Virus record (IMG/VR): IMGVR_UViG_3300045256_000050
Coordinates: 1-64,000 of that record
Strand: one strand, 5' to 3'
DNA: 64,000 bases
This document shows, one piece after another, positions 165 to 17,402 of the stretch; position 1 is the first letter of the stretch; each line of letters starts with the position of its first letter. The notes beneath the pieces are model-generated. The model did no database searches, was not told the DNA's origin, and saw only the letters and a program-made list of their open reading frames with translations. The position numbers were made by a program, and so were the translations under genes.

Positions 165-305
165 ATGCGCTCTAAACGCCCTCGCAAGTTTATTAACATG
201 CGGGGAGCGTTCACCATCGGGTTACTAACAAACACCCCGGCACTGTACATCCTGGCGGCAGTGGCGGCACTGTCCGCCTACCTTTCGATGCGAAAGCATC
301 TCTGA
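165..305 (+). CDS. Small membrane protein (46 aa)
   Basis: ATG at 165, hydrophobic C-terminal half, stop is the TGA of the repeat at 303. Confidence 0.55.
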   Translation: MRSKRPRKFINMRGAFTIGLLTNTPALYILAAVAALSAYLSMRKHL

Positions 306-321
306 CACCGACTGGAGAGCC

Positions 322-507
322 ATGAAGGACGCACAAACCATCCACGACATCACCCGGTACATCACCCGGACACACGACCTGAGCGACAGCGATAAGCTCG
401 CCGTCGCCCTGGAACTAATCGAGTCCATCCCCAGAGCCTTCGAGTTCGAGGACGGGCTGCGGAAGGCGGTGGAGCGGGAACGCCTGACACCGGCTGGACA
501 AGCGTAA
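322..507 (+). CDS. Hypothetical protein
   Basis: GGAG RBS; reads through the repeat and stops at its TAA (LTPAGQA*). Confidence 0.75.
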   Translation: MKDAQTIHDITRYITRTHDLSDSDKLAVALELIESIPRAFEFEDGLRKAVERERLTPAGQA

Positions 508-526
508 GAAGGGCACAAAGGAATCA

Positions 527-698
527 CACCACGGTCCTCGGGCACGACCCGTAGGATAGAACCTCAGCCATCAGGACGCACGCCAAGCGGCCTGTGAGGG
601 TTCGCATACCACCGCAAAGCCACCGGGCAATGCGGCCGTGCGTCCACAAGGGGCGACCGGGCGATTTAACCAAGAGGTATGGCAACCGTGCCGTGGTG
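527..698 (+). ncRNA. Candidate structured ncRNA
   Basis: Nested helices CACCACGG 527-534/CCGTGGTG 691-698 and GGACGCACG 574-582/CGTGCGTCC 637-645; crossing pair CATACC 605-610/GGTATG 676-681; no convincing ORF. Confidence 0.45.
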
Positions 699-705
699 CG
701 TTATC

Positions 706-775
706 ATCGCAGTGTCAGTATTCGGTAACGGCCCTCTGTCGGAGGGAGTAGCGGGTTCGATCCCCGCCTGCGATG
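706..775 (+). tRNA. tRNA-Asp(GTC), atypical D-arm, no encoded CCA
   Basis: Acceptor ATCGCAG/CTGCGAT, anticodon loop CTGTCGG, T-arm GCGGG-TTCGATC-CCCGC, discriminator G. Confidence 0.65.
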
Positions 776-935
776 CTCAGTGAATAAGGTTTCCTACGGA
801 CCCCGAAGGGGATTCACGCCCGTAGGTGTAAAGGTTACACGGTGAAAATCCGTGATGTGACGCTACCCCTGTTCACTGAATACACAACTGACACCCACTG
901 GAAGAACGTCACCCACAACCCCACGGAGAAACGGA

Positions 936-1211
936 ATGCTCACCCTCGTCGGTCGTCTGCTCGGTCTGTTCGTCCTGCTCCTCGGCCTCGGCCTGCTCGT
1001 CGGCGGCGTCTACCTCGGCATCTGGGAGATGCTGGTCGGTGGCATCATCGACATCATCAACCAAGTGAAAGCCCCGTCCACCGACGCCGGGACCGTGGCG
1101 TGGGCCATCGTCAAAATCATCTTCTTCGAGCTACCCATCGTCGTCGGGTTCTGGCTCGGCATCATCCTCATGACGTTCGGCGGCACCGCCCTGTTCCACA
1201 AGTCCCGCTAA
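936..1211 (+). CDS. Membrane protein (2-3 TM segments)
   Basis: GGAG RBS, long hydrophobic segments. Confidence 0.8.
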   Translation: MLTLVGRLLGLFVLLLGLGLLVGGVYLGIWEMLVGGIIDIINQVKAPSTDAGTVAWAIVKIIFFELPIVVGFWLGIILMTFGGTALFHKSR

Positions 1212-1220
1212 AACCCACAC

Positions 1221-1250
1221 CCACAACCCCGGCTAAAACCGGGGTTGTGG
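1221..1250 (+). terminator. GC-rich hairpin (terminator or processing signal)
   Basis: CCACAACCCCGG-ctaaaa-CCGGGGTTGTGG; no U-tract. Confidence 0.45.
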
Positions 1251-1306
1251 AACTCCTGACACCCACTGTAGCAGCGTAACAACCGCCTAACCAACGAGTC
1301 ACACAC

Positions 1307-1732
1307 ATGACCACGATTACCACGGCCGACTACGCTGCACTGAAGGCGAAAATCGACGCCTACCACAACTCCATGAGAACCCTGTTCCCCAACCAGAACG
1401 GGTTCACCCCCGAACAAATCAAGCAAATCGTCAAGCACGCCCGCATCGACCGGGAACCGACCAACGACGAACGGAGCAAGGTCGAAACCTACGAGTTCTG
1501 CCACAACCCGCCGGATCGGTACTTCCTCTACATCAACGAGAACGACAAGACGGCAACCACCTGGACCGGCGAAATCCTCGGCACCGTCTACCTCGGACAC
1601 GCCTACCGGGATAACTTCGGCGGCAAGCGGCGTAGCGTCACCGTCCGGGCCGTCAACGGCTACACCTACCACGGCACCTACTTCTGCTCCACCGGGAACT
1701 ACGCCCGGATCAAGCGGAGCAAAGCCGCCTGA
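1307..1732 (+). CDS. Hypothetical phage protein
   Basis: Lies between repeats; stop is the repeat TGA. Confidence 0.85.
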   Translation: MTTITTADYAALKAKIDAYHNSMRTLFPNQNGFTPEQIKQIVKHARIDREPTNDERSKVETYEFCHNPPDRYFLYINENDKTATTWTGEILGTVYLGHAYRDNFGGKRRSVTVRAVNGYTYHGTYFCSTGNYARIKRSKAA

Positions 1733-1776
1733 CACCGACCGGGGAAGCGTAACAACCGCCTAACCAAGAGAAACAC

Positions 1777-2022
1777 ATGAAGAAAGCTCCGAAGCTCACC
1801 CCGGAACAACTGGCGAAGGCCGTCGCCCAAACCTACGCCTACCTCGAAGGTGACACCGGCAAGGTACACGGCAGCTACGACGGCGGCGGCTGGATCACCG
1901 TCACCGGACACAACCTCCCCGCCCACCCCGATCTGAGGGACAAGTACCCGAACGGGTGGAGCATGATGGAACGCATCCGCACCAGTGAGGCACGTCAGCG
2001 GCTCATCGAAGCCTGCCGCTGA
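1777..2022 (+). CDS. Hypothetical protein
   Basis: Lies between repeats; stop is the repeat TGA. Confidence 0.8.
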   Translation: MKKAPKLTPEQLAKAVAQTYAYLEGDTGKVHGSYDGGGWITVTGHNLPAHPDLRDKYPNGWSMMERIRTSEARQRLIEACR

Positions 2023-2061
2023 CACCGGCTGCCGAAGCGTAACAACCCACACGAGACACAC

Positions 2062-2391
2062 ATGGACCCGATCAAGGCCCAACTGGAACAAGCCGGGTAC
2101 ACCAACGTCGTCGCCATTCGCAAAGGGCGATGGTACACGGCGACCAAGAACAACGACCCGTGTGCCATCCTCTACCAGCACGACAACGCATGGCACTGGT
2201 TCCACGCCGTTCACCAAGCAACCGCCAGCGGTAGCTCCGCAAGCCAAGCGGCCAACGGCGGGCTGGGGGACGCAATCAGCGACGACGACGACATGAAGCA
2301 GTACAAGCGGATGATCCGCCAAACCCCGCCCGGTATCCTCGATCTGGCCGGAGTGTTCGCCGCCTACTGCCAAGTCCAGAACGACAACTGA
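2062..2391 (+). CDS. Hypothetical protein
   Basis: Lies between repeats; stop is the repeat TGA. Confidence 0.8.
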   Translation: MDPIKAQLEQAGYTNVVAIRKGRWYTATKNNDPCAILYQHDNAWHWFHAVHQATASGSSASQAANGGLGDAISDDDDMKQYKRMIRQTPPGILDLAGVFAAYCQVQNDN

Positions 2392-2407
2392 CACCGACTG
2401 GAGGGGC

Positions 2408-2530
2408 ATGAAAGTCACACTGCTCGCCGCAATGCTCGGACCGCCAGCATTCCTCGCAATGCTGGCCTACCTGCAAAGCCTCCTGACACCGACTGCAACG
2501 GCACAACCCAACCCCAAAGGAACACGATGA
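2408..2530 (+). CDS. Small hydrophobic peptide (40 aa)
   Basis: GGAGG RBS, ATG at 2408, reads through the repeat, ATGA overlap with the next gene. Confidence 0.45.
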   Translation: MKVTLLAAMLGPPAFLAMLAYLQSLLTPTATAQPNPKGTR

Positions 2531-2808
2531 AGGCCACCAACGAAGGCACCGGGCACAACCGCACCATCCGCCTCACCGGACTGCCCGGCACCAACGGCAC
2601 CCTGACGGAACTGACAATCACCGTCAACTACACCAACACCCCCAACGACGGCAGTACGCTCGACAAGGCCGTCACCCTGGATAGCGTCGTCATCCCGGAA
2701 CTGCTCCGGGCCATCAACGCCACCGGGCAACTCGACACGTTCTTCTCCGGCCTCAAGCCCAACACCGGGGACGCCTTCAAGCCCGAAACCGACGCCCGGC
2801 CGGGCTAA
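2527..2808 (+). CDS. Hypothetical protein
   Basis: AAGGA RBS, protein-like composition. Confidence 0.8.
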   Translation: MKATNEGTGHNRTIRLTGLPGTNGTLTELTITVNYTNTPNDGSTLDKAVTLDSVVIPELLRAINATGQLDTFFSGLKPNTGDAFKPETDARPG

Positions 2809-2817
2809 AGTCAACCT

Positions 2818-2890
2818 GTCGCATTCGTCTAGCGGTCTAGGACACTGCCCTTTCAAGGCAGTAACACGGGTTCGAGTCCCGTATGCGACA
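2818..2890 (+). tRNA. tRNA-Glu(TTC), no encoded CCA
   Basis: Full cloverleaf: acceptor GTCGCAT/ATGCGAC, D-arm GTCTAGCGGTCTAGGAC, anticodon arm CTGCC-CTTTCAA-GGCAG, T-arm ACGGG-TTCGAGT-CCCGT. Confidence 0.93.
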
Positions 2891-2912
2891 CTAATAACAA
2901 CCGGAGCGAACC

Positions 2913-3110
2913 ATGAAGTGTGCCAGAACAGCGTGCCAAACCCCACTAGACGGCGAGCAACACATCGCCATCTGGAACGAACCGAGTACCGGCCAACCCC
3001 GGCTATACTGCGTGTTCTGCGGCATGAAAATCATCCGGGGCAACGAACACGATACCCTCAAGCTACAACACGAACTCCGGGAACCCCTGACACCGACTGA
3101 CGAAGCGTAA
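2913..3110 (+). CDS. Small Zn-finger-like protein
   Basis: CxxxxC and CxxC motifs; ends in the repeat (LTPTDEA*). Confidence 0.75.
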   Translation: MKCARTACQTPLDGEQHIAIWNEPSTGQPRLYCVFCGMKIIRGNEHDTLKLQHELREPLTPTDEA

Positions 3111-3136
3111 CCAACACCCCACCGAAGGACACGAAG

Positions 3137-3856
3137 ATGCTCACGTTCAGCAAGGCCAGTGAGTTCATCAGCAAGGGCCGCAAGAAGACGGAGCGGAAGC
3201 TGGCGGGTAGCACGGTCGCCCGCATCGTGGACGACAACACCATCGCCGTCAAGCTGTACGACACGGACATCGTTCTCATCCACCGGAACGGGAACTACAC
3301 CCTCAATACCGGCGGCTGGCGGACCGTCACCACGAAAGAACGGATCAACGAGTACACCCCCGCCCGCCTGTACCAAGAGAAAGGCAACTGGTACATCGGT
3401 GACACCGAGTTCACTGAGGGAATGGTGGTCGATTCCACCGGGAAGATCGTCAAGGGCGGCAACGTCCGGGCCGCTAAGAAGCGGACGAAACTCATGGCCG
3501 ACGTGAAGCGGTACATCAACGGGTTCGCCGCACAAGCCGTCAAGAACGGGGGACTGGAAAAGCCCGGCAGCGGGGATTGCCTCATCTGCCAAATCGGGTG
3601 CCAACACCCCCAACAGGACAACCCGGAAAGCCACGTCCTAGACCACATTCGGGAAAACTACTACGTCCCGAGTCTGCTGGTACTGGCTATCCGCCACCGC
3701 AACCCGAACGAGTCCGCCGTGCCTATCGTCTGGGGCATCTGCGACCGGGAAGTGAAGGAAGGCAATACCAAGTACCTGAAAACGGTACTCCGGGCATACT
3801 TCCGCAAGATCATGCCGAAGCTGACGCAAGCCGTGACACCGACTGTGGCAGCGTAA
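3137..3856 (+). CDS. Hypothetical phage protein
   Basis: AAGGA RBS; ends in the repeat (VTPTVAA*). Confidence 0.85.
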   Translation: MLTFSKASEFISKGRKKTERKLAGSTVARIVDDNTIAVKLYDTDIVLIHRNGNYTLNTGGWRTVTTKERINEYTPARLYQEKGNWYIGDTEFTEGMVVDSTGKIVKGGNVRAAKKRTKLMADVKRYINGFAAQAVKNGGLEKPGSGDCLICQIGCQHPQQDNPESHVLDHIRENYYVPSLLVLAIRHRNPNESAVPIVWGICDREVKEGNTKYLKTVLRAYFRKIMPKLTQAVTPTVAA

Positions 3857-3886
3857 CAACAACACACCCCAACAAAGGGTAACACG

Positions 3887-4381
3887 ATGGGCCGCACGAT
3901 GCAACGGATTCGGAACAAGCCGGGCAGCACACACCAAGCCCGGCGACACTTCCACAAGTGTTCCCGAATCGGGAACATCATCAAAGTGGAAGCCGTCCGG
4001 TACACCGCCATGTTCCTCAGTCAAGACAAAACCCACCGCTACCCGATTACTAACGAAGTCATCCGGGTAACGGGCACACACGGCACCGTCCGACTACACG
4101 GCCTCTGCTGGGGCTACGGCGGAACCGGACCGTCCGCCCTCCGGGACTTGCTACTCTTCCTCGGACTAAAGGAAGGGCACGCCCGGCTCGCAGCGTTCAA
4201 CACCCACCGACGGCAACACTCGCAAATCGGGGTAGACTGGACCCTGGAGTTCAACACGACCGACGGGCTAGGCCGACCGGGGTACGTCGTCCTGACACCG
4301 GCCGAAGGGGAGAAGCGGGGCTGGCAACGGTCAGAGGCTCTGGTCGAGCTACCCCCCGTCACCCTACTCGGCAGGGAGTAA
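3887..4381 (+). CDS. Hypothetical phage protein (WGYGGTGP motif)
   Basis: ORF follows a repeat and RBS. Confidence 0.75.
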   Translation: MGRTMQRIRNKPGSTHQARRHFHKCSRIGNIIKVEAVRYTAMFLSQDKTHRYPITNEVIRVTGTHGTVRLHGLCWGYGGTGPSALRDLLLFLGLKEGHARLAAFNTHRRQHSQIGVDWTLEFNTTDGLGRPGYVVLTPAEGEKRGWQRSEALVELPPVTLLGRE

Positions 4382-4382
4382 G

Positions 4383-4601
4383 ATGGACCCGACGTGCGGC
4401 ACACTCGCCCGGATGATCTTCAACATGGTGCGGGACGACTACGACCCCCGCCCCACCATCTACCGATGCGTCATGCTCATATCCCCCGAACACCGGCGGG
4501 ACGTGGCTAAGGCTATGGCCGACGACTTCCGACGCCATAGCCGGGAAGATAAGGAAATCGGTTCCCACGTCATCATCGGCTGGCTCGCCGGTATTAACTG
4601 A
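4383..4601 (+). CDS. Hypothetical protein
   Basis: GGGAG RBS, coupled to the upstream gene. Confidence 0.65.
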   Translation: MDPTCGTLARMIFNMVRDDYDPRPTIYRCVMLISPEHRRDVAKAMADDFRRHSREDKEIGSHVIIGWLAGIN

Positions 4602-4876
4602 GGATACGGCTAATAATCACCCGGTTATTAGCCGACCTGACACCGGCTGGTGAGGGGCAGGACAGTAAGCAGCAACCGCCCAAAACGACACGAATTGCCA
4701 CGATTGTAACTTGACAACCGTTCCGCCCTGGAAGGCCACTGGAAAATGTCAAGTTACAGACGGGATGCTGGCAAGCTGTCAGGAAGGGTAAGATGGGCGG
4801 TCTAAGGCCCGCCGACTGTCTCGTTGCCACGCACGCACACGCACGAGAGTTGATTAAGAAACATTACTCAACGTGC
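4602..4876. other. Candidate replication origin region
   Basis: Non-coding; inverted repeats CGGCTAATAA/TTATTAGCCG (about 4607-4634) and TGTAACTTGACA 4705-4716/TGTCAAGTTACA 4747-4758; C-rich to G-rich skew switch. Confidence 0.45.
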
Positions 4877-4926
4877 TGACACCGGCTGTCGTGGTGTTAA
4901 GAAACAACCAACCGGGGTAGAGTAAC

Positions 4927-5559
4927 ATGCGTCAAGCGAAGGTGAACCTGTACTCGGTGAACGAACTGACGGGCAAGGCGAAGGACAAGGCAATCGAAGC
5001 CGGTCGGGAGTGGCATAACGCCACGTTCGATTCGGCCGAGATGACGGAACAACTGAAGGAGTACGCCCACGAGAAGCACGGCGTCAAGGCCGACGACGTG
5101 AACTGGTCGATTTCCTTCAGTCAAGGCGACGGTGTGGCGTTCTACGGCACCATCGACCTAGACGAACTGGCGAAGAAGCACGAGAACGTCAAGAAGCTGG
5201 TGGACGCCGCCGCCGAGATCGACGTGACCCTGAGCGTCACCAGTGAGGGGCGGAACAACCGCTATCACCACTGGAACAGCATGAGTGTGACGGCCGAGCA
5301 TGACACCGGCTATCGGTACAGTGAGAGGTTCGCCGACGACGACGAGACGCCGCTGATGGAGAAGGCGGACAAGCTCGCCACGGAGCTACAGGAAGCGGTC
5401 GCCGAGATTCTGAAGGCGGCAAGCCGTGACACCCATAGCTGGGGCGAGAAGTGCGTCCTGGCCGACAGTGAGGATTCGGCCATCGTGGAACTGCTGGAAG
5501 AGAACGAGTGGGAGTTCGACGTGAACGGGAAGCCGTTCGGCCACCCGGAAGCGGAGTAG
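4927..5559 (+). CDS. Conserved-looking acidic phage protein
   Basis: N-terminal 'LYSVNELTGKAKDKAIE' and C-terminal 'NEWEFDVNG' patterns resemble a widespread phage/plasmid hypothetical family. Confidence 0.85.
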   Translation: MRQAKVNLYSVNELTGKAKDKAIEAGREWHNATFDSAEMTEQLKEYAHEKHGVKADDVNWSISFSQGDGVAFYGTIDLDELAKKHENVKKLVDAAAEIDVTLSVTSEGRNNRYHHWNSMSVTAEHDTGYRYSERFADDDETPLMEKADKLATELQEAVAEILKAASRDTHSWGEKCVLADSEDSAIVELLEENEWEFDVNGKPFGHPEAE

Positions 5560-5739
5560 TGTACAAACAACCATCCCCCGGAGCGGCAATCTCCGGGGGA
5601 TGGTGCGGCAAGTGGCAGAACAGGCAGTCAACGGGGAGTTGACAACTACACTTTAACCGCCAAACGCCCCGTGTCAACTTTTCCCGGAATCTGACACCGG
5701 ATGTCGGGGAGCAACGACAACCCAAGAGAGGGTCAGACG

Positions 5740-6111
5740 ATGTTCTGGGGCAGCATTCAAGAGCGGGAGCAGTGGGAGTACGAAGCGGGCATGGCGAACG
5801 AGTGGCAGAACGCCTTCGCCGTGTCGCAGATGGAACGCAAGCCCGACGACCGGGCGGCGGCTGAGGAACTGGTTTCTCTCGGCCGTTACGTCGTGGTGCG
5901 TGAGGGGGTGGTTTTCTGCCCCCGGACCGACGCCAGCATGGGCACCGCCGTCTACATGCTGGGGGACTTCGAGACGCACGACGAAGCCCTGGAGATGGCA
6001 CGGGAAGAGGGCCGGGACGACGACGGGGATTCGTGGGTGCGGGTGATGACGCCGACGCCGGTAATCCTCAACCCGCCGACCCCGCTAAACCCGTCGGATA
6101 TCCCGTTCTGA
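5740..6111 (+). CDS. Hypothetical protein with an SSB-like DIPF C-terminus
   Basis: CCCAAGAGAGGG RBS module, ATG at 5740; stop is the repeat TGA. Confidence 0.8.
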   Translation: MFWGSIQEREQWEYEAGMANEWQNAFAVSQMERKPDDRAAAEELVSLGRYVVVREGVVFCPRTDASMGTAVYMLGDFETHDEALEMAREEGRDDDGDSWVRVMTPTPVILNPPTPLNPSDIPF

Positions 6112-6167
6112 CACCGACTGCAAGAGGGCGGGGCAACTTGCCCCGCCTAACCAACTCAAGGTGACTG

Positions 6168-6668: not shown

Positions 6669-6783
6669 GGTGGTGGGAATTTGAGGCGGGGACTTAAACC
6701 CGCCTCTTTCCCAACGCAACATAACAAACATTATCGGACGTTGACACCGGCTGGAGCGGCGTAACCTTCACTGAGGACACGAG

Positions 6784-11026: not shown

Positions 11027-11080
11027 CACCGACCGCTAGGGGGCGAGGACGACTCGCCCCCTTCACTCACTGAGGCGACG

Positions 11081-11332: not shown

Positions 11333-11365
11333 CACCGGCTGTCGGGGCACCAACGAGGACAACCG

Positions 11366-11728
11366 ATGAGCTTCCTGACCAAGCGGGCCGACAGCTACGC
11401 CAAAGTCGCCGAGAACTACCGGCGGCTCGAAGGGGTGTGCATCAAGTTCGGGCTGGTGCCCAAGAGCGGCGACCTGTTCACTGAGGAAAGCTGGCCGATC
11501 CCCGTCCATGAGGACGACCGGCCGCTGGAATACTGGCCGAGTGAACGGGTGGGCAGCGTGCTGTTGACGAAGCCGGGCACGTTCCCGGAACACGTCGCAG
11601 CGGTGCGGGTGAACGCTGACGGCTACTACGGCCACGTCATCGGGGCGGGTGGCAATCACGACCTGTACGCAAGCGACCTGGAGCATCTGCTGCAACGGGC
11701 CGGGCTGACACCGGCTGCCGGGGTGTAA
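11366..11728 (+). CDS. Hypothetical protein
   Basis: GAGGA RBS; ends in the repeat (LTPAAGV*). Confidence 0.8.
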   Translation: MSFLTKRADSYAKVAENYRRLEGVCIKFGLVPKSGDLFTEESWPIPVHEDDRPLEYWPSERVGSVLLTKPGTFPEHVAAVRVNADGYYGHVIGAGGNHDLYASDLEHLLQRAGLTPAAGV

Positions 11729-11744
11729 CCAAGAGGACAACGAG

Positions 11745-12041
11745 ATGCCAGTGATCGTGAAGTACGACAACGGGTTCGACACGAAGCTGCTCAAGGCTGA
11801 CAAGCTCGAAGCTCTGGTCAGCCAGCACGGTTCGCCGACGTTCGACACGGCACGCAACCTGTGGGTGTTCGCCGACGGCACCACCTACCTGTTCAAGAAC
11901 CCGTTCCCCGGCGACCGGCGGACCGTGACCGGGTTCTCGGTGGTGCCCTGGACGGACGGCGACCGTGACCTGCGAGAGAAGCTGAGCCGCCCCGACCCGA
12001 TCCGGCGGTGCTGCTGGTGCCGCTGCTACCACTACAACTGA
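11745..12041 (+). CDS. Hypothetical protein with a Cys-rich C-terminus
   Basis: GAGGA RBS; stop is the repeat TGA. Confidence 0.75.
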   Translation: MPVIVKYDNGFDTKLLKADKLEALVSQHGSPTFDTARNLWVFADGTTYLFKNPFPGDRRTVTGFSVVPWTDGDRDLREKLSRPDPIRRCCWCRCYHYN

Positions 12042-12066
12042 CACCGGCTGCTGAGGCGTGGAGGAC

Positions 12067-12250
12067 AGCATGGTAAACGCAAGAGACGGGCCGGGTTGAG
12101 TGACGGTCGTCATTCAACAATACTCTGTGTGGGAGACTGAGCATGACCCGTGCAAGGCCACCGCCGGTATAACTCAACCTGTCGCATACCGGATTCGCAC
12201 CGAAGGCAACCTGCGAGCCACGAACCCACCGGAAAGGAGCGTGTACCATG
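12067..12250 (+). ncRNA. Candidate structured ncRNA occupying a cassette slot
   Basis: Closing helix CATGGTAAACGC (about 12068-12079)/GCGTGTACCATG (12239-12250); inner helix GGGTTGAGT/ACTCAACCT; alternative CCGGTAT/ATACCGG; no good ORF. Confidence 0.5.
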
Positions 12251-12359
12251 AAGCGGTCGTAACCCTTACCTCATGATGATCGGCCGGGGCGGGGAGGAGA
12301 CTAACCCGCCCCCTTCTGACACCGACTGTCGAAGCGTAACAACACCAGAGGACGGGACG

Positions 12360-12557
12360 ATGGACACGAGCAAGCTGAGCGGCTGGCAGCGTCAGGTTCG
12401 GCAGAACATCCGCAACGCCTTCCTCACCGCCACCCGTGCGGAGTTGGAGAAGGCGTTGAGCAACTACCCCGATGACTTCAGTAAGGAGTGCATCCGGGAG
12501 ATCATCGCCGAGTGCGATGCGGCCGGGGTGGACAATGCCGGTAAGCGGCCTGCCTGA
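12360..12557 (+). CDS. Hypothetical protein
   Basis: GAGGA RBS, ATG at 12360; stop is the repeat TGA. Confidence 0.75.
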   Translation: MDTSKLSGWQRQVRQNIRNAFLTATRAELEKALSNYPDDFSKECIREIIAECDAAGVDNAGKRPA

Positions 12558-12604
12558 CACCGGCTGTCGGGGTGTGAGACGGACAACCCAAGAGAGGGAA
12601 GACG

Positions 12605-13141
12605 ATGCAGATTGTCAACGGCAAGCTCGTGCTGGGCAAGAAGAACTGCAACTGCGGCGACGGCACCGTGTCCACCCGAGTGACCTGCAAGTCGTGCAAC
12701 GGCAGCGGGCGGGGCAAGCGGGGCGGGGCGAGGGGGTGCAAACCGTGCTACGGCAACGGCACCACCTACGACCACGACAAGCGGAGCGTGTGCCCGCAGT
12801 GCAACGGCAACTTCAAGGATCACGACGACGAAGATACCTGCGACTACCTTCCCGCCGGGGTGTTCGCCGGGTTCACCTTCCGGGTCTACTACGGCGGGCA
12901 GATGACCATCGGTGAGGCGTTGATGGGGCTGGGCTGTGTGTTCTCGTGTGGCGACTACGGGGCCGCATGGAAGGAACGCAACGACGAGAAGTTGATCGCC
13001 GACGTGCGACAGCACAGCGGGGTGCAAGCCACGAAGGTTGTCGATAAGGACAACAACGTGGCCGACCACATCGGGATTTTCGTGACGCCGAGCGGGTACA
13101 CGGTGAAGCCGGTGTTCGTGACACCGGCTGTCGGGGTGTGA
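12605..13141 (+). CDS. DnaJ-type zinc-finger (CxxCxGxG repeats) protein
   Basis: CNCGDG, CKSCNGSG, CKPCYGNG, CPQCNG motifs; ends in the repeat (VTPAVGV*). Confidence 0.85.
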   Translation: MQIVNGKLVLGKKNCNCGDGTVSTRVTCKSCNGSGRGKRGGARGCKPCYGNGTTYDHDKRSVCPQCNGNFKDHDDEDTCDYLPAGVFAGFTFRVYYGGQMTIGEALMGLGCVFSCGDYGAAWKERNDEKLIADVRQHSGVQATKVVDKDNNVADHIGIFVTPSGYTVKPVFVTPAVGV

Positions 13142-13200
13142 TAGGGACGGACAACGGGGGCGAGCAACACCGCTCGCCCCTCACCTTCACTGAGGCGACG

Positions 13201-13446
13201 ATGACCCCGACGAAGCACAACATCATCATCGACGGCGACGTTTCGGCGAGCGACCTGATCGACTCGTGGAACAACGGGAACAAGAGCTACGTTCTGGACA
13301 AGTTGGAGAACGACCACGCCGGGCTGACGGCTCTGGTTCTCGTGAGCGGGGCGACCGACAAGCGGCTGAGTCTCGCCGCCTGCAACGAGATCACCAACAA
13401 GCTGATCGACCGGCGGCGGGAGATGATGCTTCGGGCCGAGCGGTGA
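13201..13446 (+). CDS. Hypothetical protein
   Basis: CACTGAGG RBS, ATG at 13201; stop is the repeat TGA. Confidence 0.8.
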   Translation: MTPTKHNIIIDGDVSASDLIDSWNNGNKSYVLDKLENDHAGLTALVLVSGATDKRLSLAACNEITNKLIDRRREMMLRAER

Positions 13447-13482
13447 CACCGGCTGTCGTCGTGTAACCAAGAGGACACGACG

Positions 13483-13758
13483 ATGGTCAAGCTCAACGCT
13501 CGCACCCGGATGTTGGTCAACGACGCTCTGCACGACATGTGCAAGCGTCGTCACCGCTCGATCCCCCTGTCCGACATCACTTCGCTGCTCGCCACCCACG
13601 GGCTGAAGATTGAGGAATGTATCCTCACCGGCCGGGTCGGCAACGCACAGATTGACGTGCTGACCACCGACGGGCAGGACGTGAATAGCTGGCTGGTGCT
13701 GTCGTGGATGAAGGGCGACATCGACCACCAGTGGGAAGTGAACGCCTACCTGTCCTGA
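13483..13758 (+). CDS. Hypothetical protein
   Basis: GAGGA RBS; stop is the repeat TGA. Confidence 0.8.
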   Translation: MVKLNARTRMLVNDALHDMCKRRHRSIPLSDITSLLATHGLKIEECILTGRVGNAQIDVLTTDGQDVNSWLVLSWMKGDIDHQWEVNAYLS

Positions 13759-13814
13759 CACCGGCTGCTAGGGGGCGAGGAAGACACTCGCCCCCTTCAC
13801 TGAGGACAACGCTC

Positions 13815-14039
13815 ATGACGATTCAGGCTCCCGCCCCGTTCCACGACGGCACGTTCGTCCTGCACAAGATCGAACTCAACGGGCACAAGTATTCCGCATG
13901 GTTCGGCAAGGACGGGGTTGTGTTCTCGGCCGAGCGGTTCAGCCGGGACAATCAGAAGACGTTCAACGTCCCGCTCAACCGTCAGAAGAACGTGGCCGAG
14001 CAGTTGACCAAGATCGGCAAGCGGTACACGGGCCGCTGA
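13815..14039 (+). CDS. Hypothetical protein
   Basis: CACTGAGG RBS, ATG at 13815; stop is the repeat TGA. Confidence 0.8.
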   Translation: MTIQAPAPFHDGTFVLHKIELNGHKYSAWFGKDGVVFSAERFSRDNQKTFNVPLNRQKNVAEQLTKIGKRYTGR

Positions 14040-14084
14040 CACCGGCTGTCGAAGTGTAAGAAACCCACACACTGAGGACGAACG

Positions 14085-14312
14085 ATGTACGCTCTGCTCG
14101 CCGAGTTCCGCCGGGGCAACAAGTACAACATCACCCTCAAGACGGGCAACGACGTGGCGAAGCTGGCCGACCTGGGGTGGATCGTGTTCGACGACCCGGC
14201 GGTGCTGGTCGCCGAGATGGAGAGCGGCAAGAAGATGCTCAACATGAAGTACGAGAAACGGGAGCAGATCATCGCCTACCTCCGGGCGATGACACCGGCT
14301 GTGGCGGTGTAA
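14085..14312 (+). CDS. Hypothetical protein
   Basis: CACTGAGG RBS; ends in the repeat (MTPAVAV*). Confidence 0.8.
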   Translation: MYALLAEFRRGNKYNITLKTGNDVAKLADLGWIVFDDPAVLVAEMESGKKMLNMKYEKREQIIAYLRAMTPAVAV

Positions 14313-14335
14313 GGCAACCCAAGAGAGGGACGACG

Positions 14336-14605
14336 ATGGCCTACCGCCTGACGCTGACGAAGGGTGAGCGGGATGCGATTGACTGGATCGGTCATCGCTA
14401 CCGCCACGGCGACGAGTTCTATCGCCTGCTGATGGAATGCACGGCGACCCCGGACGACGCCGATTGGGACGACGAGCGGGATATCGAGTACACGATCCCC
14501 GAACACGTCGCCTGGACGATGGGCGAGATCATCGACGAAGGGCTGGACTGCTTCGCCGACGAACTGTGCAGCAAGCTCCGGGCCTTCCGCAACCGCATCG
14601 TGTGA
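14336..14605 (+). CDS. Acidic hypothetical protein
   Basis: CCCAAGAGAGGG RBS, ATG at 14336; stop is the repeat TGA. Confidence 0.8.
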   Translation: MAYRLTLTKGERDAIDWIGHRYRHGDEFYRLLMECTATPDDADWDDERDIEYTIPEHVAWTMGEIIDEGLDCFADELCSKLRAFRNRIV

Positions 14606-14662
14606 CACCGGCTGCTAGGGGGCGAGGACAACCCTCGCCCCTCACCTTCACCGAGAGAAGAC

Positions 14663-14920
14663 ATGAACCGCACCCCGAGCATCCTGTCCGGCCTCCGCAC
14701 CGCCACCGTCGCCCCGGTCGCCCCGGTCAACGTGAGCCACAAGCGGGTTGACCTGTTCAACAGCATGTGCAACGGCACCGAGATCACGATCATGTCCCGG
14801 CCCGACGGCAAGTACCACACGGGCATCGTGACCAGCATCGCCCGTGAGGACGGCAGCGGGTACAAGTTCCTGGTCCGCCTGCACAACAGCCCGACGATCC
14901 ACTACGTCGTGATGATGTGA
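14663..14920 (+). CDS. Hypothetical protein
   Basis: Stop is the repeat TGA. Confidence 0.8.
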   Translation: MNRTPSILSGLRTATVAPVAPVNVSHKRVDLFNSMCNGTEITIMSRPDGKYHTGIVTSIAREDGSGYKFLVRLHNSPTIHYVVMM

Positions 14921-14966
14921 CACCGGCTGACGGGGCGTAACGATCACCCGCACTGAGGACACGACG

Positions 14967-15161
14967 ATGGCGAAGAAGATGCACACGACGGCCCCCATCA
15001 AGGACAAGGGGGCCGAGTTGTTCGCTCCGATCAAGCTCAGCGTTGGGCTGGGCCGGGTCGGGCACCAGCAGCACACCGGCGGCACCGGGTTCCACAACAG
15101 CCGGAAGCGGGCTGGCAACCGCTCGCAGCAGACCCGCAAGGCGGTCGCCGAGTACGCCTGA
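14967..15161 (+). CDS. Small basic protein
   Basis: CACTGAGG RBS; stop is the repeat TGA. Confidence 0.8.
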   Translation: MAKKMHTTAPIKDKGAELFAPIKLSVGLGRVGHQQHTGGTGFHNSRKRAGNRSQQTRKAVAEYA

Positions 15162-15197
15162 CACCGCCTGTGGTGGTGTAAGAAACCCAAGAGAGGG

Positions 15198-15452
15198 ATG
15201 CAGATGAGTCGTGAACGCTCGCTGGTTCGTGCGATCCGTGAAGTCAAGGTGCGGAAGCACCACCGTGACCTTGCCAAGCTGATCGCCGACCAGATGGACC
15301 CCGAGAACGTCGGGATCGACGGCCGACCGATCTACCGCAACGTCCACGTCGCTCGCCGCCACCTGCTGATCGACTGGCAGAAGTCGTTCCGCAAGCGTCG
15401 GTGCCGACGGTGTGCCCGGCGAGTCGCCAAGTGCGAACTCCGGGCTGCGTGA
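15198..15452 (+). CDS. Arg-rich small protein
   Basis: CCCAAGAGAGGG RBS; stop is the repeat TGA. Confidence 0.75.
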   Translation: MQMSRERSLVRAIREVKVRKHHRDLAKLIADQMDPENVGIDGRPIYRNVHVARRHLLIDWQKSFRKRRCRRCARRVAKCELRAA

Positions 15453-15528
15453 CACCGGCTGTAGGGGTGTGAGAGGGGCGGGCGAGTGACCCGCCCCTGA
15501 CCTGCGACCTTCACTGAGGACACGACAC

Positions 15529-15942
15529 ATGGCGACCCGGCTCTACCCGCACACGAAGAACACCGTCATCATCGAGAAGCTGCTGGGCGTGCCCGAAGGC
15601 ACGGCCCTCCGGCACGCCGCCCTCAACGAGCCGTTCAAGCAGGCGAAGGCCAAGCTCAACGAGGGGTTCGCCGACCTGACGCTGGAGCAGCAGGCCGAGC
15701 GGCGGCGGGAGTACATGCGACTGGACGAGGCCGAGTGGGACGCCAACAACTCCAGCGAGGAGATCGCCAAGTACGACGGGTTCTTAACCTTCGGGTGGGG
15801 CCGGGTGGTGCATCGGCACTGCTCCGAGCCGAGCGGCTACACCAACGACCCGGTGCTGGTCGCCCAAATCCTCCGGGCACAGGGGGTGACGCTCCCGCCC
15901 GACGTGAAGATCGAAGACCTGGAAGGGCTGGGGTGGTGCTGA
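15529..15942 (+). CDS. Hypothetical protein
   Basis: CACTGAGG RBS; stop is the repeat TGA. Confidence 0.8.
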   Translation: MATRLYPHTKNTVIIEKLLGVPEGTALRHAALNEPFKQAKAKLNEGFADLTLEQQAERRREYMRLDEAEWDANNSSEEIAKYDGFLTFGWGRVVHRHCSEPSGYTNDPVLVAQILRAQGVTLPPDVKIEDLEGLGWC

Positions 15943-16009
15943 CACCGGCTGTAGGGGTGTGAGAGGGGCGGACGAGTGAGCCGCCCCCACACCCAAGAGA
16001 GGGAACACG

Positions 16010-16342
16010 ATGGCGACCCGCAACCGCTGGAACAAGTGGAACATCCGGGCCAAGCTGAAGACCGACTTCAAGTGGTGCCGCCGGGCACTGATCGTGCTGT
16101 ACCAGCGGCAGACCGCTGACGAGCAGTCGGCCACCCGGACCAAGCACGACAACGACCGGGGCTTCAACCAGCCCGACGCCCGGCGGGGCAGCGAACTCGC
16201 CCGCAAGGCCATGACGCCGGTGCTGTTCGAGCCGTGGGAAGTGATCGAGGCCCGCAAGCTCCTGATGAAGTACGCCGGGCAACTCGCCCGGATCGCCAAC
16301 GAGAAGGAGCGGGCGGCGAAGGCCCGGCCGGTGACGGTGTGA
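16010..16342 (+). CDS. Conserved phage hypothetical protein
   Basis: 'RALIVLYQRQTADEQ...N.RGF..PDA...KYAGQL' motif seen in many phage proteins; stop is the repeat TGA. Confidence 0.85.
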   Translation: MATRNRWNKWNIRAKLKTDFKWCRRALIVLYQRQTADEQSATRTKHDNDRGFNQPDARRGSELARKAMTPVLFEPWEVIEARKLLMKYAGQLARIANEKERAAKARPVTV

Positions 16343-16424
16343 CACCGGCTGAGGGGGTGTGAGAGAGACGGACAACGGGGCGGGTGAGTGACCCGCCCCT
16401 CACCTTCACTGAGGACAGACGACG

Positions 16425-16619
16425 ATGCCGACCTTCGGACTCAAGCACAACATCGGCAGCAACACGACCACCGCCGGGAAGTTCGACAGCAGCGGCCTGA
16501 CCTACCTCGGCATGCTGAGCGGTGAGAAGGAGATCAAGTGGACGACGATGACCCTGGCGGCGGGCATCTACCACATGTACACGAACGGCAGCGAGATGTA
16601 CCTGTTCCCGGAGCAGTGA
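16425..16619 (+). CDS. Hypothetical protein
   Basis: CACTGAGG RBS; stop is the repeat TGA. Confidence 0.8.
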   Translation: MPTFGLKHNIGSNTTTAGKFDSSGLTYLGMLSGEKEIKWTTMTLAAGIYHMYTNGSEMYLFPEQ

Positions 16620-16687
16620 CACCGGCTGAGGGGGTGTGAGAGAGGGGCGGGCGAGTGACCCGCCCCCTTCACTAAGGAGCATCGCAC

Positions 16688-16870
16688 ATGTCGAAGTACA
16701 ACGTCCGCCGCCTGAACCACCTGCTCGCCAAGCACACCGCCTTCCGCTCGCTCGCCGACCTGCTCACGAGCGTGGCCGGTGGCTACACCCCGACGATCAT
16801 CTGCCGCACCTGCCAGCACGGCGAACTCGTCCGCCTGCTCCGGGACAACGGGGTGGCTGTCCGGGTCTGA
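16688..16870 (+). CDS. Hypothetical protein
   Basis: AAGGAG RBS; stop is the repeat TGA. Confidence 0.75.
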   Translation: MSKYNVRRLNHLLAKHTAFRSLADLLTSVAGGYTPTIICRTCQHGELVRLLRDNGVAVRV

Positions 16871-16916
16871 CACCGGCTGAGGGGGTGTAACGAGGACACA
16901 ACGGAGGACGCAAGAC

Positions 16917-17402
16917 ATGGCGACGAAGACCAAGACGGCCACGGTCCCGACGACGACGGTGCTGGACGAGACGAAGGCCGGTCGCAAGCGGGCGACGAAG
17001 GCCAAGCCGGTGACGGGTCACACCGGCAAGCAGAAGATGGCCCTGGTGCTGGGCGGGGCCGCAACGTTCGTCCTGGCCCTGAGCGTCTGGGAAGTGACGA
17101 CGGCCCTGACGACGCTCACGAAGATGCCCCTGGTGATCGCCGCACTGATGGCGGTGGGGATCGACGTGGTGATGGTGCTGTGCGAGATGGCGGTGATCGC
17201 CGCCCCCGACACGGACGCCGCCCGGTGGGGTAAGCGGTACGTCGGAACGACGGTCGGCCTCAGCATGTTACTCAACGGGCTGGCCGCTACGCAGCACGCC
17301 GAGGGGATGTGGTGGCTGCTCGCTGCCCCGGTCGGTGCGATCATGCCGGTGCTGGTCTACATGGCCTTCCGGGTGGCGGGCAGCCTGTACGTTAACAAGT
17401 GA
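16917..17402 (+). CDS. Four-TM membrane protein (DUF2637/SpdA-like)
   Basis: Four hydrophobic helices, 'GID' and 'LSMLLNG' motifs; last gene of the array. Confidence 0.8.
   Translation: MATKTKTATVPTTTVLDETKAGRKRATKAKPVTGHTGKQKMALVLGGAATFVLALSVWEVTTALTTLTKMPLVIAALMAVGIDVVMVLCEMAVIAAPDTDAARWGKRYVGTTVGLSMLLNGLAATQHAEGMWWLLAAPVGAIMPVLVYMAFRVAGSLYVNK

What the first reader, a model, noticed from the sequence alone, without database searches (positions are those of the whole stretch)
303..17402. The repeat supplies the stop codons: genes end inside the motif in two reading frames
Seen: 27 ORFs use the first three bases of the motif (TGA) as their stop (e.g. 1732, 2022, 2391, 6111, 6972, 7325, 9730 ... 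16870, 17402). Another 8 read through the motif and stop at the TAA/TGA of the right arm, so unrelated proteins share the tail xTP(A/T)xxx: LTPAGQA 507, LTPTDEA 3110, VTPTVAA 3856, VTPAEVA 8160, VTPTVET 8813, LTPAAGV 11728, VTPAVGV 13141, MTPAVAV 14312. Known: integron cassette ORFs often end within attC. Inference: this zero-distance fusion suggests coding DNA is joined precisely to the left edge of the site, and the site then terminates whatever frame arrives. A simple promoter would not need such tight registration, although genome compaction could contribute.
Basis: partly seen in the sequence, partly recalled or inferred. Interest (0 to 1): 0.8.

Follow-up and report, generated by a model that had tools for sequence, protein, structure and literature searches.

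The report
Gene stops merged into repeated promoter-like motif
In the small-gene array of an uncultivated 245-kb phage, a 23-base signal sits at almost every gene junction and begins with TGA, so most genes have lost their own stop codon and use the signal's; related phages show this is small-deletion compaction against a conserved regulatory signal, not integron-like joining.

Summary
There are 47 same-strand copies of TGACACCGRCTGnnGnGGYGTRA, all in 303-17400. 27 genes stop at its TGA. 8 read through to the TRA at motif bases 21-23 and end in xTP(A/T)xxx.

The integron-like reading does not hold:
- Frame use is 27/9/1, not uniform (p = 6e-7).
- In 18 of 38 orthologous junctions in related phage contigs the stop-to-motif offset differs (0, +3, +4, +8, -20, +41). 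The last residue is often the same, and the relative's gene has its own stop just before the motif.
- One homologous lineage (L205) has an unfused layout: stop, GC hairpin with a T-rich tail, motif, Shine-Dalgarno sequence, ATG.
- TGA is invariant also where it stops nothing. The TAA-containing right arm TGTAAC is conserved also in the lineage where no gene reaches it.

Best reading: a per-gene promoter-type unit (motif, movable hairpin, ribosome-binding module), like the PeSL cassettes of T4-type phages but not sigma-70-like. The left half is lineage-specific. Stops merged with it by micro-deletion. Promoter activity itself is inferred; no RNA run was listed. This is a new variant of a known kind, of moderate interest.

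The parts
165..17448 (+). Array of about 46 small same-strand genes (40-239 aa, no paralogues, almost no family matches) with the motif at nearly every junction. It starts at or before the contig start and ends at a strong terminator.
   Evidence: window coordinate = contig coordinate of IMGVR_UViG_3300045256_000050
303..325 (+). Motif copy; TGA is the stop of 165-305; left half only, then GGAG and ATG 322
485..507 (+). Motif copy read through in frame 2; TAA 505-507 stops 322-507 (tail LTPAGQA)
889..911 (+). Free-standing copy after non-coding 508-888; precedes 936-1211
1257..1279 (+). Copy after own stop (TAA 1209-1211) and hairpin about 1222-1249
1730..1752 (+). Copy; TGA stops 1307-1732
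2020..2042 (+). Copy; TGA stops 1777-2022
2389..2411 (+). Copy; TGA stops 2062-2391; left half only, then GGAGGGG and ATG 2408
2484..2506 (+). Copy inside small ORF 2408-2530 (frame 2, ...LLTPTAT...); right half lacks a stop
3088..3110 (+). Copy read in frame 2; TAA stops 2913-3110 (LTPTDEA)
3834..3856 (+). Copy read in frame 2; TAA stops 3137-3856 (VTPTVAA). In the protein family, homology ends just before the tail.
4293..4315 (+). Weak copy (12 bits) inside gene 3887-4381
4638..4660 (+). Copy after own stop (TGA 4599-4601) and hairpin about 4607-4634
4877..4899 (+). Free-standing copy in non-coding 4602-4926; precedes 4927-5559
5692..5714 (+). Copy after TAG 5557-5559 and hairpin 5570-5604; precedes 5740-6111
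6109..6131 (+). Copy; TGA stops 5740-6111; GC hairpin follows
6742..6764 (+). Copy after TAA 6666-6668 and a hairpin; precedes 6784
6970..6992 (+). Copy; TGA stops 6784-6972
7323..7345 (+). Copy; TGA stops 7017-7325
7710..7732 (+). Copy after TGA 7648-7650 and a long hairpin; precedes 7762
8138..8160 (+). Copy read in frame 2; TAA stops 7762-8160 (VTPAEVA)
8549..8571 (+). Degenerate copy (CTG changed to CAG) read in frame 1 inside 8190-8591. Conserved as coding sequence in L198 and L199. The gene stops at a right-half-like CGTAAC at 8586-8591.
8791..8813 (+). Copy read in frame 2; TAA stops 8607-8813 (VTPTVET)
9308..9330 (+). Copy directly after hairpin about 9284-9307; own stop TAA 9267-9269. 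Orthologues have offset 0 (L198) and +6 (L199).
9728..9750 (+). Copy; TGA stops 9389-9730; hairpin 9742-9770 with a T-rich tail follows. Orthologues carry their own stop plus 1 nt.
10101..10123 (+). Copy; TGA stops 9792-10103 (the L198 orthologue has its own TAA plus 5 nt)
10414..10436 (+). Copy; TGA stops 10147-10416
10768..10790 (+). Copy; TGA stops 10474-10770; hairpin follows
11024..11046 (+). Copy; TGA stops 10829-11026; hairpin follows
11330..11352 (+). Copy; TGA stops 11081-11332
11706..11728 (+). Copy read in frame 2; TAA stops 11366-11728 (LTPAAGV)
12039..12061 (+). Copy; TGA stops 11745-12041 (the L199 orthologue has TGA-TGACACC)
12317..12339 (+). Copy directly after a hairpin in non-coding 12042-12316
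12555..12577 (+). Copy; TGA stops 12360-12557
13119..13141 (+). Copy read in frame 2; TGA 13139-13141 stops 12605-13141 (VTPAVGV). Orthologues end PVFKS* and PVFAKQ* at the motif TGA. Distant homologues run 30-45 aa further.
13444..13466 (+). Copy; TGA stops 13201-13446
13756..13778 (+). Copy (left half plus hairpin); TGA stops 13483-13758
14037..14059 (+). Copy; TGA stops 13815-14039. The L199 orthologue is shifted to frame 2 by a 4-nt insertion. In L201 the motif is deleted and the two genes are fused.
14290..14312 (+). Copy read in frame 2; TAA stops 14085-14312 (MTPAVAV). In L199 this copy has decayed into coding sequence and a second copy follows.
14603..14625 (+). Copy; TGA stops 14336-14605; hairpin follows
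14918..14940 (+). Copy; TGA stops 14663-14920
15159..15181 (+). Copy; TGA stops 14967-15161
15450..15472 (+). Copy; TGA stops 15204-15452; hairpin follows
15940..15962 (+). Copy; TGA stops 15529-15942 (the L199 orthologue has the same ...GLGWC, then TGA-TGACACC); hairpin follows
16340..16362 (+). Copy; TGA stops 16010-16342. The protein is full length, about 10 aa longer than its Xanthomonas jumbo-phage homologues. Hairpin follows.
16617..16639 (+). Copy; TGA stops 16425-16619; hairpin follows
16868..16890 (+). Copy; TGA stops 16688-16870
17400..17421 (+). Degenerate last copy (TGACACCCTGCG); TGA stops 16917-17402
17422..17458 (+). Strong intrinsic-terminator-like hairpin with a T run that closes the array

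Best explanation
The repeat is the core of a per-gene regulatory unit: a 23-base motif, a GC hairpin that can lie on either side of it, and one of two conserved ribosome-binding modules. It most likely acts as a promoter read by a lineage-specific factor, either a phage RNA polymerase or a sigma-like or activator protein. Every small early-type gene would then be its own transcription unit. The motif is under strong sequence constraint and its first three bases are TGA; a TRA lies at bases 21-23. The spacer between a gene's own stop and the motif is dispensable, and small deletions remove it. A deletion that fuses the ORF to the motif is tolerated if the frame meets TGA (no extension) or TRA (a 7-aa TP(A/T) tail). 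It is mostly not tolerated in the third frame. Once fused, the junction cannot erode further, so fused states accumulate. Shown: the counts, the sharp left edge of the motif, the lability of orthologous junctions, the unfused architecture in a homologous lineage, and conservation of the in-motif stops where they are not used as stops. Inferred: promoter activity, the deletion ratchet, and a role for recombination between copies in swapping genes.
For: - Sharp left edge. Across 107 copies, information content is 2 bits from T1 on; upstream there is only codon periodicity. TGA precedes 108 of 119 CACCNNCYG anchors, including copies that follow hairpins and stop nothing.
- Selection acts on specific positions. 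At 34 orthologous junctions the left half is 90% identical and the variable motif positions 38%, against 71% for coding DNA.
- Junctions are labile. 18 of 38 orthologous pairs differ in offset (0, +3, +4, +6, +8, -20, +41), often with the same last residue. Offsets in relatives are 0 x29, -20 x10, +3 x5, +4 x4, then a short tail.
- Frames are 27/9/1.
- Order of elements. In the window, 6 junctions read stop, hairpin, motif. In L205 (16 kb, 46 copies of ATTACAGCTGTACCAAT..TGTAAC) every junction reads TAA, GC hairpin with a T-rich tail, AT-rich stretch, motif, AACCCTGGAGG, ATG. There the stop-to-core distance is 28-76 nt and the core-to-start distance 41-52 nt. A gene that follows a terminator needs a promoter, and the motif is the only conserved element in that gap.
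- The right half TGTAAC is shared by all three lineages. The left half is lineage-specific: TGACACCGRCTG, TGAGACACCGGACAAC, or CAGCTGTACCAAT.
- In hairpin-less window units the motif-to-start distance is 36-53 nt.
- Array proteins with homologues elsewhere are full length; the tails are additions.
- The phage prefers TAA outside the array.
- PeSL cassettes of T4-type phages have the same layout, from the stop codon of the upstream gene through promoter and movable stem-loop to Shine-Dalgarno sequence and ATG, in regions rich in ORFans (PMC2839356, PMC4122927).
Against: - No transcript data: no RNA run was listed.
- The motif does not fit a sigma-70 -35/-10 pair. TGACA to TAAC is spaced about 15 nt, the -10-like part lacks the final T, and the consensus scan finds no more sites than in shuffles.
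- About 19 window copies lack the right half. In two of them (303, 2389) the ATG lies only 19 nt after the motif start, so the left half must have a role of its own, or these copies are not promoters.
- Where a hairpin follows the motif, a promoter would fire into it.
- Among the larger proteins of the 64-kb window, the 25 of 34 Pfam families shown include no RNA polymerase or sigma gene. The other 181 kb of the genome were not examined.
- In L202, 37 of 48 genes have the stop exactly abutting the core. That is tighter than in L198/L199 and could indicate a functional coupling beyond compaction.
Confidence: 0.6

Rival explanations
1. Integron-like cassette system: a site-specific recombinase joins incoming coding DNA exactly at the left edge of the site, and the site supplies the stop.
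For: 35 zero-spacer junctions. Gene content differs between relatives by whole gene-plus-motif units. In a related contig of run X6, 7 of the 8 homology-piece boundaries within the contig lie in intergenic units.
Against: Frames are strongly non-uniform. Orthologues share C-termini but have their own stops 3-8 nt upstream, or are shifted by 4-nt indels. A homologous lineage is unfused. The site is 23 nt long, not a 57-141 bp imperfect palindrome with R/L boxes. Each gene has its own Shine-Dalgarno module and promoter-like unit. Among the larger window proteins, the Pfam families shown include no recombinase.
Confidence: 0.04
2. Operator or roadblock sites (stoperator-like): a phage DNA-binding protein binds the asymmetric left half at every junction to shut off or time the early array. 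The true promoter element is the shared right half.
For: Many asymmetric sites in one orientation relative to transcription, and a lineage-specific consensus, as described for Cluster A stoperators (PMC6550527). The left half is conserved even where the right half is absent. The left half varies between lineages while the right half is constant.
Against: Density of one per gene, confined to 17 kb; the strict GGCTG form of the motif matched nowhere else in the 245-kb contig. No repressor was identified. In L205 the motif is the only candidate promoter between terminator and gene.
Confidence: 0.15
3. RNA-level signal: a site in the polycistronic early transcript for a sequence-specific endoribonuclease, an RNA-binding regulator or translational coupling. 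It must stay free of translating ribosomes, so stops abut it.
For: Strict strand specificity. Tight association with the end of the upstream ORF. The adjacent hairpins could protect processed ends. L202 junctions abut the core very tightly.
Against: There is no conserved RNA pairing: the left half is invariant, and base 19 is C in 43 copies and T in 46, so the only possible 5-bp stem has an A-C mismatch in about 40% of copies with no compensation. Eight genes translate straight through the left half. Copies lie downstream of terminator-like hairpins. Some junctions have no motif at all (2530/2527, 4381/4383).
Confidence: 0.12
4. Selected translational insulator: the unit has been shaped to close reading frames so that newly captured or truncated ORFs are terminated before the next ribosome-binding site.
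For: Stops in two frames in the window form. A third (CTGA) is present when base 13 is A and is used by two L198 genes ending ...DTN* and ...DTD*. The commonest L202 version, TGAGACACCGGACAACCTGATGTGAGAG, closes all three frames within 25 nt. TGA is replaced only by TAA at three L202 junctions.
Against: The right-half TAA is equally conserved in L205, where no ORF reaches it. TGA is kept in copies that stop nothing. Frame 1 is usually open in the window.
Confidence: 0.08

Closest known systems
PeSL (promoter-early stem-loop) regulatory cassettes of T4-type phages (Arbiol et al. 2010, PMC2839356; Comeau et al. 2014, PMC4122927)
   Same: A repeated composite intergenic unit in an ORFan-rich plastic region. 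As drawn in that paper's figure legend, the unit runs from the stop codon of the upstream gene through promoter and stem-loop to Shine-Dalgarno sequence and start codon. The stem-loop position is variable relative to the promoter. About 50 copies per genome. The consensus differs between phage lineages. Gene gain and loss between relatives occur beside the units.
   Different: The motif here is not sigma-70-like and is GC-rich. Its first three bases are themselves the stop of 27 genes, and 8 genes translate through it. Copies are denser, about one per 370 bp in a single 17-kb one-strand array. Promoter and terminator activity and mini-circles are untested here.
Stoperators of Cluster A mycobacteriophages (PMC6550527; PMC9283540 is listed but was not read)
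   Same: Numerous short asymmetric sites, predominantly in one orientation relative to transcription, with a lineage-specific consensus.
   Different: Stoperators are 13 bp, about 20-35 per genome, spread over the genome, and bound by an identified immunity repressor. Here there is one site per gene junction in one array, and no repressor is known.
Promoters of single-subunit phage RNA polymerases (T7, T3, SP6, K11), from general knowledge
   Same: A contiguous element of about 23 nt, with a lineage-specific upstream part and a shared downstream part, repeated before many genes on one strand and sometimes overlapping the end of the upstream gene.
   Different: No such polymerase was seen in the 64 kb examined. 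The upstream AT-rich part is absent. The resemblance of TGACAC to the SP6 promoter core is only a hexamer.
Integron attC sites
   Same: ORFs often end inside the site. Arrays of small, unrelated, same-strand genes.
   Different: attC sites are 57-141 bp imperfect palindromes that differ between cassettes and need an IntI integrase. Integron cassettes usually lack their own promoter. None of this holds here.

Membership tests
Integron gene cassettes / attC | Imperfect inverted repeat of 57-141 bp with R''-L''/L'-R' boxes (RYYYAAC ... GTTRRRY) | tested here: not met
   The conserved unit is 23 nt with an invariant asymmetric left half. There is only a weak 5-bp complementarity, with an A-C mismatch in about 40% of copies.
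Integron gene cassettes / attC | Adjacent IntI-type integrase with attI and Pc | tested here: inconclusive
   The array proteins have no such Pfam match. Among the 47 larger non-array window proteins, the 25 of 34 families shown include no recombinase. The remaining 181 kb of the genome were not examined.
Integron gene cassettes / attC | Cassette boundaries at one fixed crossover point | tested here: not met
   Orthologous junctions differ by 1-8-nt indels and frame switches in 18 of 38 pairs.
PeSL-type regulatory cassettes | Repeated composite intergenic motif concentrated in a plastic, ORFan-rich region, just upstream of ORFans | tested here: met
   47 copies in 17 kb, none in 18-64 kb. 45 array proteins with almost no family hits and no paralogues.
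PeSL-type regulatory cassettes | Sigma-70-type -35/-10 pair with about 17-nt spacing | tested here: not met
   The consensus scan finds 2 sites against 2.5 in shuffles, none at the motif. Spacing from TGACA to TAAC is about 15 nt.
PeSL-type regulatory cassettes | Stable GC stem-loop at a variable position relative to the promoter part | tested here: met
   Hairpins of -15 to -28 kcal/mol lie directly before the motif at about 6 junctions and after it at about 14. In L205 they are always before it.
PeSL-type regulatory cassettes | Shine-Dalgarno sequence and start codon at the 3' end of the unit | tested here: met
   The modules CCCAAGAGAGGGAnGACGATG and TTCACTGAGGACACGACGATG; start codon 36-53 nt from the motif start where no hairpin intervenes.
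PeSL-type regulatory cassettes | Indels and replacements between relatives bounded by the units | tested here: inconclusive
   Whole gene-plus-motif presence/absence differences among the window, L198 and L199. The homology pieces of a contig in run X6 mostly end in intergenic units. Divergence is too high for base-level breakpoints, and short repeat matches inflate the joint counts.
PeSL-type regulatory cassettes | Demonstrated promoter and terminator activity | not testable with these tools
   No RNA run was listed.
Stoperators | Many asymmetric sites in one orientation relative to transcription | tested here: met
   All copies lie on the coding strand.
Stoperators | Cognate immunity repressor; sites spread over both genome arms | tested here: not met
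   Sites are confined to 303-17400. The strict motif form matched nowhere else in the 245-kb contig. No repressor-like family appears among those shown for the window proteins.
Single-subunit phage RNA polymerase promoters | Phage-encoded T7-like RNA polymerase | tested here: inconclusive
   None among the Pfam families shown for the window's larger proteins. Three quarters of the genome were not examined.

The most novel reading that the evidence does not exclude
The unit is a new kind of portable gene-expression cassette for a so far unknown phage transcription system. Its recognition sequence has been shaped to close reading frames (two frames in this phage, all three in the commonest L202 form). 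Any ORF fragment recombined in between two copies would then be terminated and expressed at once. That would make it a gene-capture and gene-birth device for ORFan arrays in a widespread family of jumbo phages.
Probability: 0.1. Interest if true: 0.7.

Novelty: new variant of a known kind. Interest (0 to 1): 0.4.

Why it matters
The work turns an apparent integron-in-a-phage into a worked example of how a constrained regulatory motif that contains stop triplets absorbs the stop codons of neighbouring genes and adds a common 7-residue tail to unrelated proteins. Annotators should expect both effects in compact phage genomes.

It also shows that PeSL-like one-gene regulatory cassettes exist outside T4-type phages. 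They occur in a previously undescribed family of large phages found in runs labelled hot-spring mat, soil, sludge and others. The motifs are not sigma-70-like, and their left half changes with lineage.

That points to a phage-specific transcription or regulatory factor still to be identified. The arrays offer dozens of natural promoter variants per genome for testing it.

Tried and rejected
- Near-identity search of the first 20 kb against GenBank phages: no match.
- Motif scans of IMG/VR returned only the window's own contig and an identical 80-kb contig as multi-copy hits.
- The 666-aa protein next to the array has no relatives in IMG/VR or in the 5.8-billion-protein set.
- The metagenome motif scan gave only two short related contigs.
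- RNA runs: none was listed, so transcript ends could not be mapped.
- RNA hairpin between the two halves: rejected. There is no covariation and a frequent A-C mismatch.
- Sigma-70 promoter: rejected as a literal fit. An ECF-type fit (TGAAAC-N16-CGTA, recalled from memory) was rejected because the spacing here is 12 nt.
- Paralogy or duplication of the array genes: none at E < 0.01.
- Rfam on 1-20 kb: only tRNA-Glu.
- Most joints reported when reads were laid have sides of 23-39 nt and are repeat cross-matches. They were not used as evidence of cassette excision.
- The TGA of L202 sits 2 nt further from the core, and I first took this as independent evidence for a selected stop. It is more simply a GA insertion (CTGA-GA-CACC), so the TGA is ancestral to both lineages.

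Full report
**What the window is**

The window equals bases 1-64000 of a 244,986-bp IMG/VR viral contig, IMGVR_UViG_3300045256_000050. An 80-kb contig from a second sample is 100% identical. DNA runs that hold it are labelled hot-spring or microbial-mat metagenomes.
- The rest of the window encodes tail-fibre-like paralogues, a phage metallopeptidase, Met-tRNA synthetase, a CCA-adding-type enzyme, and a histidine kinase with a receiver protein. This is a large phage.
- It has no near relative among GenBank phages.

**Check of the observation**

- CTGACACC occurs 30 times against 3.1 expected, only on the + strand and only in 302-16874.
- A weight matrix of TGACACCGRCTGnnGnGGYGTRA finds 46 copies on +, none on -, and none beyond 16868. 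A degenerate copy lies at 17400.
- GC3-based gene calls give about 46 same-strand genes of 40-239 aa.
- For each copy I found the coding frame that runs into it. 27 genes stop at the motif's TGA. 8 read xTG-ACA-CCG-RCT... and stop at the TRA of bases 21-23.
- Of the other 12 copies, 8 lie beyond a separate stop, mostly just after a GC hairpin. One follows a non-coding stretch. Three lie inside ORFs: 2484, and the weak or degenerate 4293 and 8549.
- The chance of 27 of 46 stops at one exact offset is about 3e-36.
- Outside the array the phage prefers TAA (26 of 45 stops; TGA 15). Inside it TGA makes up 32 of 46.

**Anatomy of the unit**

- Each intergenic unit has three parts: the motif, an optional GC hairpin, and one of two conserved ribosome-binding modules, CCCAAGAGAGGGAnGACG-ATG or TTCACTGAGGACACGACG-ATG.
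- Without a hairpin, the start codon lies 36-53 nt from the motif start. With a hairpin it lies 57-85 nt away.
- The hairpin lies just before the motif at about 6 junctions, giving the order stop, hairpin, motif. It lies after the motif at about 14.
- About 19 copies have only the left half. In two of them (303, 2389) it runs straight into GGAG and an ATG at +19.
- A strong terminator at 17422-17448 closes the array.
- The 45 array proteins tested have no paralogues and almost no Pfam or PHROG matches.

**Relatives**

The motif scan of metagenomes gave two short contigs of a relative. L074 is 92% identical to 13648-14537 with the motifs conserved. L073 carries the same motifs around different genes.

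Homologues of two array proteins led to longer arrays:
- L198, L199/L200 and L201 carry the same TGACACC motif at nearly every junction.
- L202/L203 carry cTGA-GACACCGGACAAC-nnnn-TGT(A/G)A about 50 times in 17 kb.
- L205/L206 carry ATTAC-AGCTGTACCAAT-TAGGT-TGTAAC 46 times in 16 kb.
- L204 has no dense repeat.

The right half TGTAAC is common to all three motif types. GACACCGG lies at the same distance from it in the window and in L202. The left half is lineage-specific.

Runs labelled soil and sludge hold mosaic relatives whose pieces are 83-99% identical to the window.

**Why genes end in the motif**

1. *The left edge is sharp.* Across 107 copies the information content is 2 bits from T1 on. 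Upstream there is only codon periodicity. TGA precedes 108 of 119 CACCNNCYG anchors, including copies that stop nothing.
2. *The motif is kept by selection on particular positions, not by recent copying.* At 34 orthologous junctions the left half is 90% identical and the variable motif positions only 38%, against 71% for coding DNA.
3. *The junction is labile.* In the relatives the distance from stop to motif is 0 (29 genes), -20 (10), +3 (5), +4 (4), +6, +8, +10, -10 and a few longer. Of 38 orthologous pairs, 18 differ in offset, often with the same last residue:
   - ...GLGWC|TGA(motif) in the window against ...GLGWC-TGA-TGACACC in L199.
   - ...PAF|TGA against ...PPF-TAA-C-TGACACC (L198) and ...GPF-TGA-G-TGACACC (L199).
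   - ...MGKR|TGA against ...MGKK-TAA-AGCCC-TGACACC (L198).
   - ...RYTGR|TGA against ...RYTGRTVTPAGVA*, after a 4-nt insertion in L199.
   - A junction with a hairpin between stop and motif in the window (+41) against 0 (L198) and +6 (L199).
   - The 178-aa family ends PVF-VTPAVGV (window), PVF-VTPTVGA (L201), PVFKS| (L198) and PVFAKQ| (L199). Distant homologues run 30-45 residues further.
4. *Frames are 27/9/1, not uniform* (p = 5.7e-7). Frame 1 is open unless base 13 is A. Two L198 genes use that CTGA. One window gene (8190-8591) reads through a copy in frame 1, and that copy has since decayed.
5. *Proteins with outside homologues are full length.* The 239-aa family aligns up to residue 231-234, just before the tail. 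The 110-aa protein is about 10 aa longer than its Xanthomonas jumbo-phage homologues.
6. *L205 shows the unfused state.* The order is TAA, hairpin with a T-rich tail, AT-rich stretch, motif, AACCCTGGAGG, ATG. The stop-to-core distance is 28-76 nt and the core-to-start distance 41-52 nt. Its right half still contains TAA although no ORF reaches it.

Together these results show that the in-motif stops are intrinsic parts of a recognition sequence. They are used opportunistically once small deletions remove a gene's own stop and the spacer. Fused states cannot erode further, so they accumulate.

**What the motif does (inferred)**

- In L205 every gene is followed by a terminator-like hairpin. The motif is the only conserved element before the next ribosome-binding site, so a promoter role is the simplest reading.
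- The window's unit shares the right half, the distance to the start codon and homologous neighbouring genes. It also sits right after hairpins at several junctions.
- A left half that varies by lineage with a shared right half points to a recognition factor that evolves with the lineage.
- The layout matches the PeSL cassettes of T4-type phages: stop codon, promoter, movable stem-loop, Shine-Dalgarno sequence and start codon, about 50 per genome, in plastic regions rich in ORFans. Those cassettes were shown to act as promoters and terminators and were proposed to mediate modular shuffling (PMC2839356 and PMC4122927).
- Here gene content differs between relatives by whole gene-plus-motif units. 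Identity jumps between adjacent genes, for example 85% next to 49%. Seven of the eight within-contig homology-piece boundaries of a contig in run X6 lie in intergenic units. Base-level breakpoints could not be obtained.

Against a literal promoter call:
- No sigma-70 fit.
- Left-half-only copies exist.
- No transcript data.
- No polymerase or sigma gene among the families shown for the 64 kb examined.

**Rivals**

- A stoperator-like operator (PMC6550527).
- An RNA-level processing or coupling site.
- A selected frame-closing insulator. The commonest L202 version closes all three frames.
- The integron-like model, which the junction data contradict.

**Verdict**

The attC-like mechanism is not supported. 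The best explanation is a PeSL-like, promoter-type unit that is not sigma-70-like, whose stop triplets have absorbed the gene ends through compaction. This is a new variant of a known kind, of moderate interest.

Noticed in passing
window 508-935, especially 705-779: A 428-nt non-coding stretch after motif 485 holds a tRNA-like cloverleaf: an 8-bp acceptor stem CATCGCAG/CTGCGATG, a T-arm GCGGGTTCGATCCCCGC, a possible GTC anticodon and a poor D-arm. Neither ARAGORN nor Rfam calls it. The folding z-score is only -1.1.
   Followed up: partly
window 2818-2891: A tRNA-Glu(TTC) gene inside the array, with no motif of its own.
   Followed up: yes
window 12042-12316 (mini-ORF 12248-12262; conserved string 12076-12093): A non-coding segment between two motif copies that is conserved in L073, L198 and L199 (AACGCAAGAGACGGGCCG). 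It has a strong Shine-Dalgarno sequence, a 4-codon ORF (MKRS) and then a GC hairpin. It may be a leader or small RNA. The ORF 12100-12276 has low GC3 and is probably not a gene.
   Followed up: partly
window 4705-4758: A perfect 12-bp inverted repeat, TGTAACTTGACA ... TGTCAAGTTACA, containing TTGACA, in the 325-nt gap before gene 4927-5559. It looks like an operator or a host-type promoter and is unlike the array motif.
   Followed up: no
window 31937-33408: A phage-encoded histidine kinase with an ethylene-receptor-like N-terminal domain (ETR1_N, HisKA, HATPase_c), followed by a stand-alone receiver protein.
   Followed up: partly
window 46492-48141 and 60106-61776: Methionyl-tRNA synthetase and a PolyA_pol-head (CCA-adding type) enzyme. 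A HAD 'Swiss Army Knife RNA repair' domain family also matches one window protein. These are translation- and RNA-repair-related genes in a jumbo phage.
   Followed up: partly
window 36058-38971: Three tandem paralogous genes of about 322 aa, tail-fibre-like.
   Followed up: partly
L201 2077-2568 against window 13815-14312: In one relative a deletion removed the motif and the ribosome-binding module. The two neighbouring genes are fused into one 163-aa ORF. An assembly error is not excluded.
   Followed up: partly
L199 10700-10750 against window 14290-14312: An old motif copy has decayed into coding sequence (RTMTLLAPV*). Its right-half TGA is now the first triplet of a second, intact copy, so two copies lie in tandem 20 nt apart.
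   Followed up: partly
L202 11288-17241: About 20 neighbouring copies are identical over about 30 nt (TGAGACACCGGACAACCTGATGTGAGAG) and close all three reading frames. Neighbouring copies in the window are also more alike than distant ones (AGCGTAAC type in 1257-3834, GGTGTGAGAG type in 15450-16617). This suggests local homogenisation or promoter subclasses.
   Followed up: no
runs X5 and X6 laid on window 11000-16999: Runs labelled soil and bioreactor-sludge metagenomes hold contigs 83-99% identical to parts of this hot-spring phage array, arranged as a mosaic. Either the phage family is widespread or the sample labels are unreliable.
   Followed up: partly
L074 (reverse strand) last 120 nt against window 14537 onward: Homology to the window (92%) stops abruptly inside gene 14336-14605, not at a motif. 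This is either recombination within a gene or a chimeric low-coverage contig.
   Followed up: no
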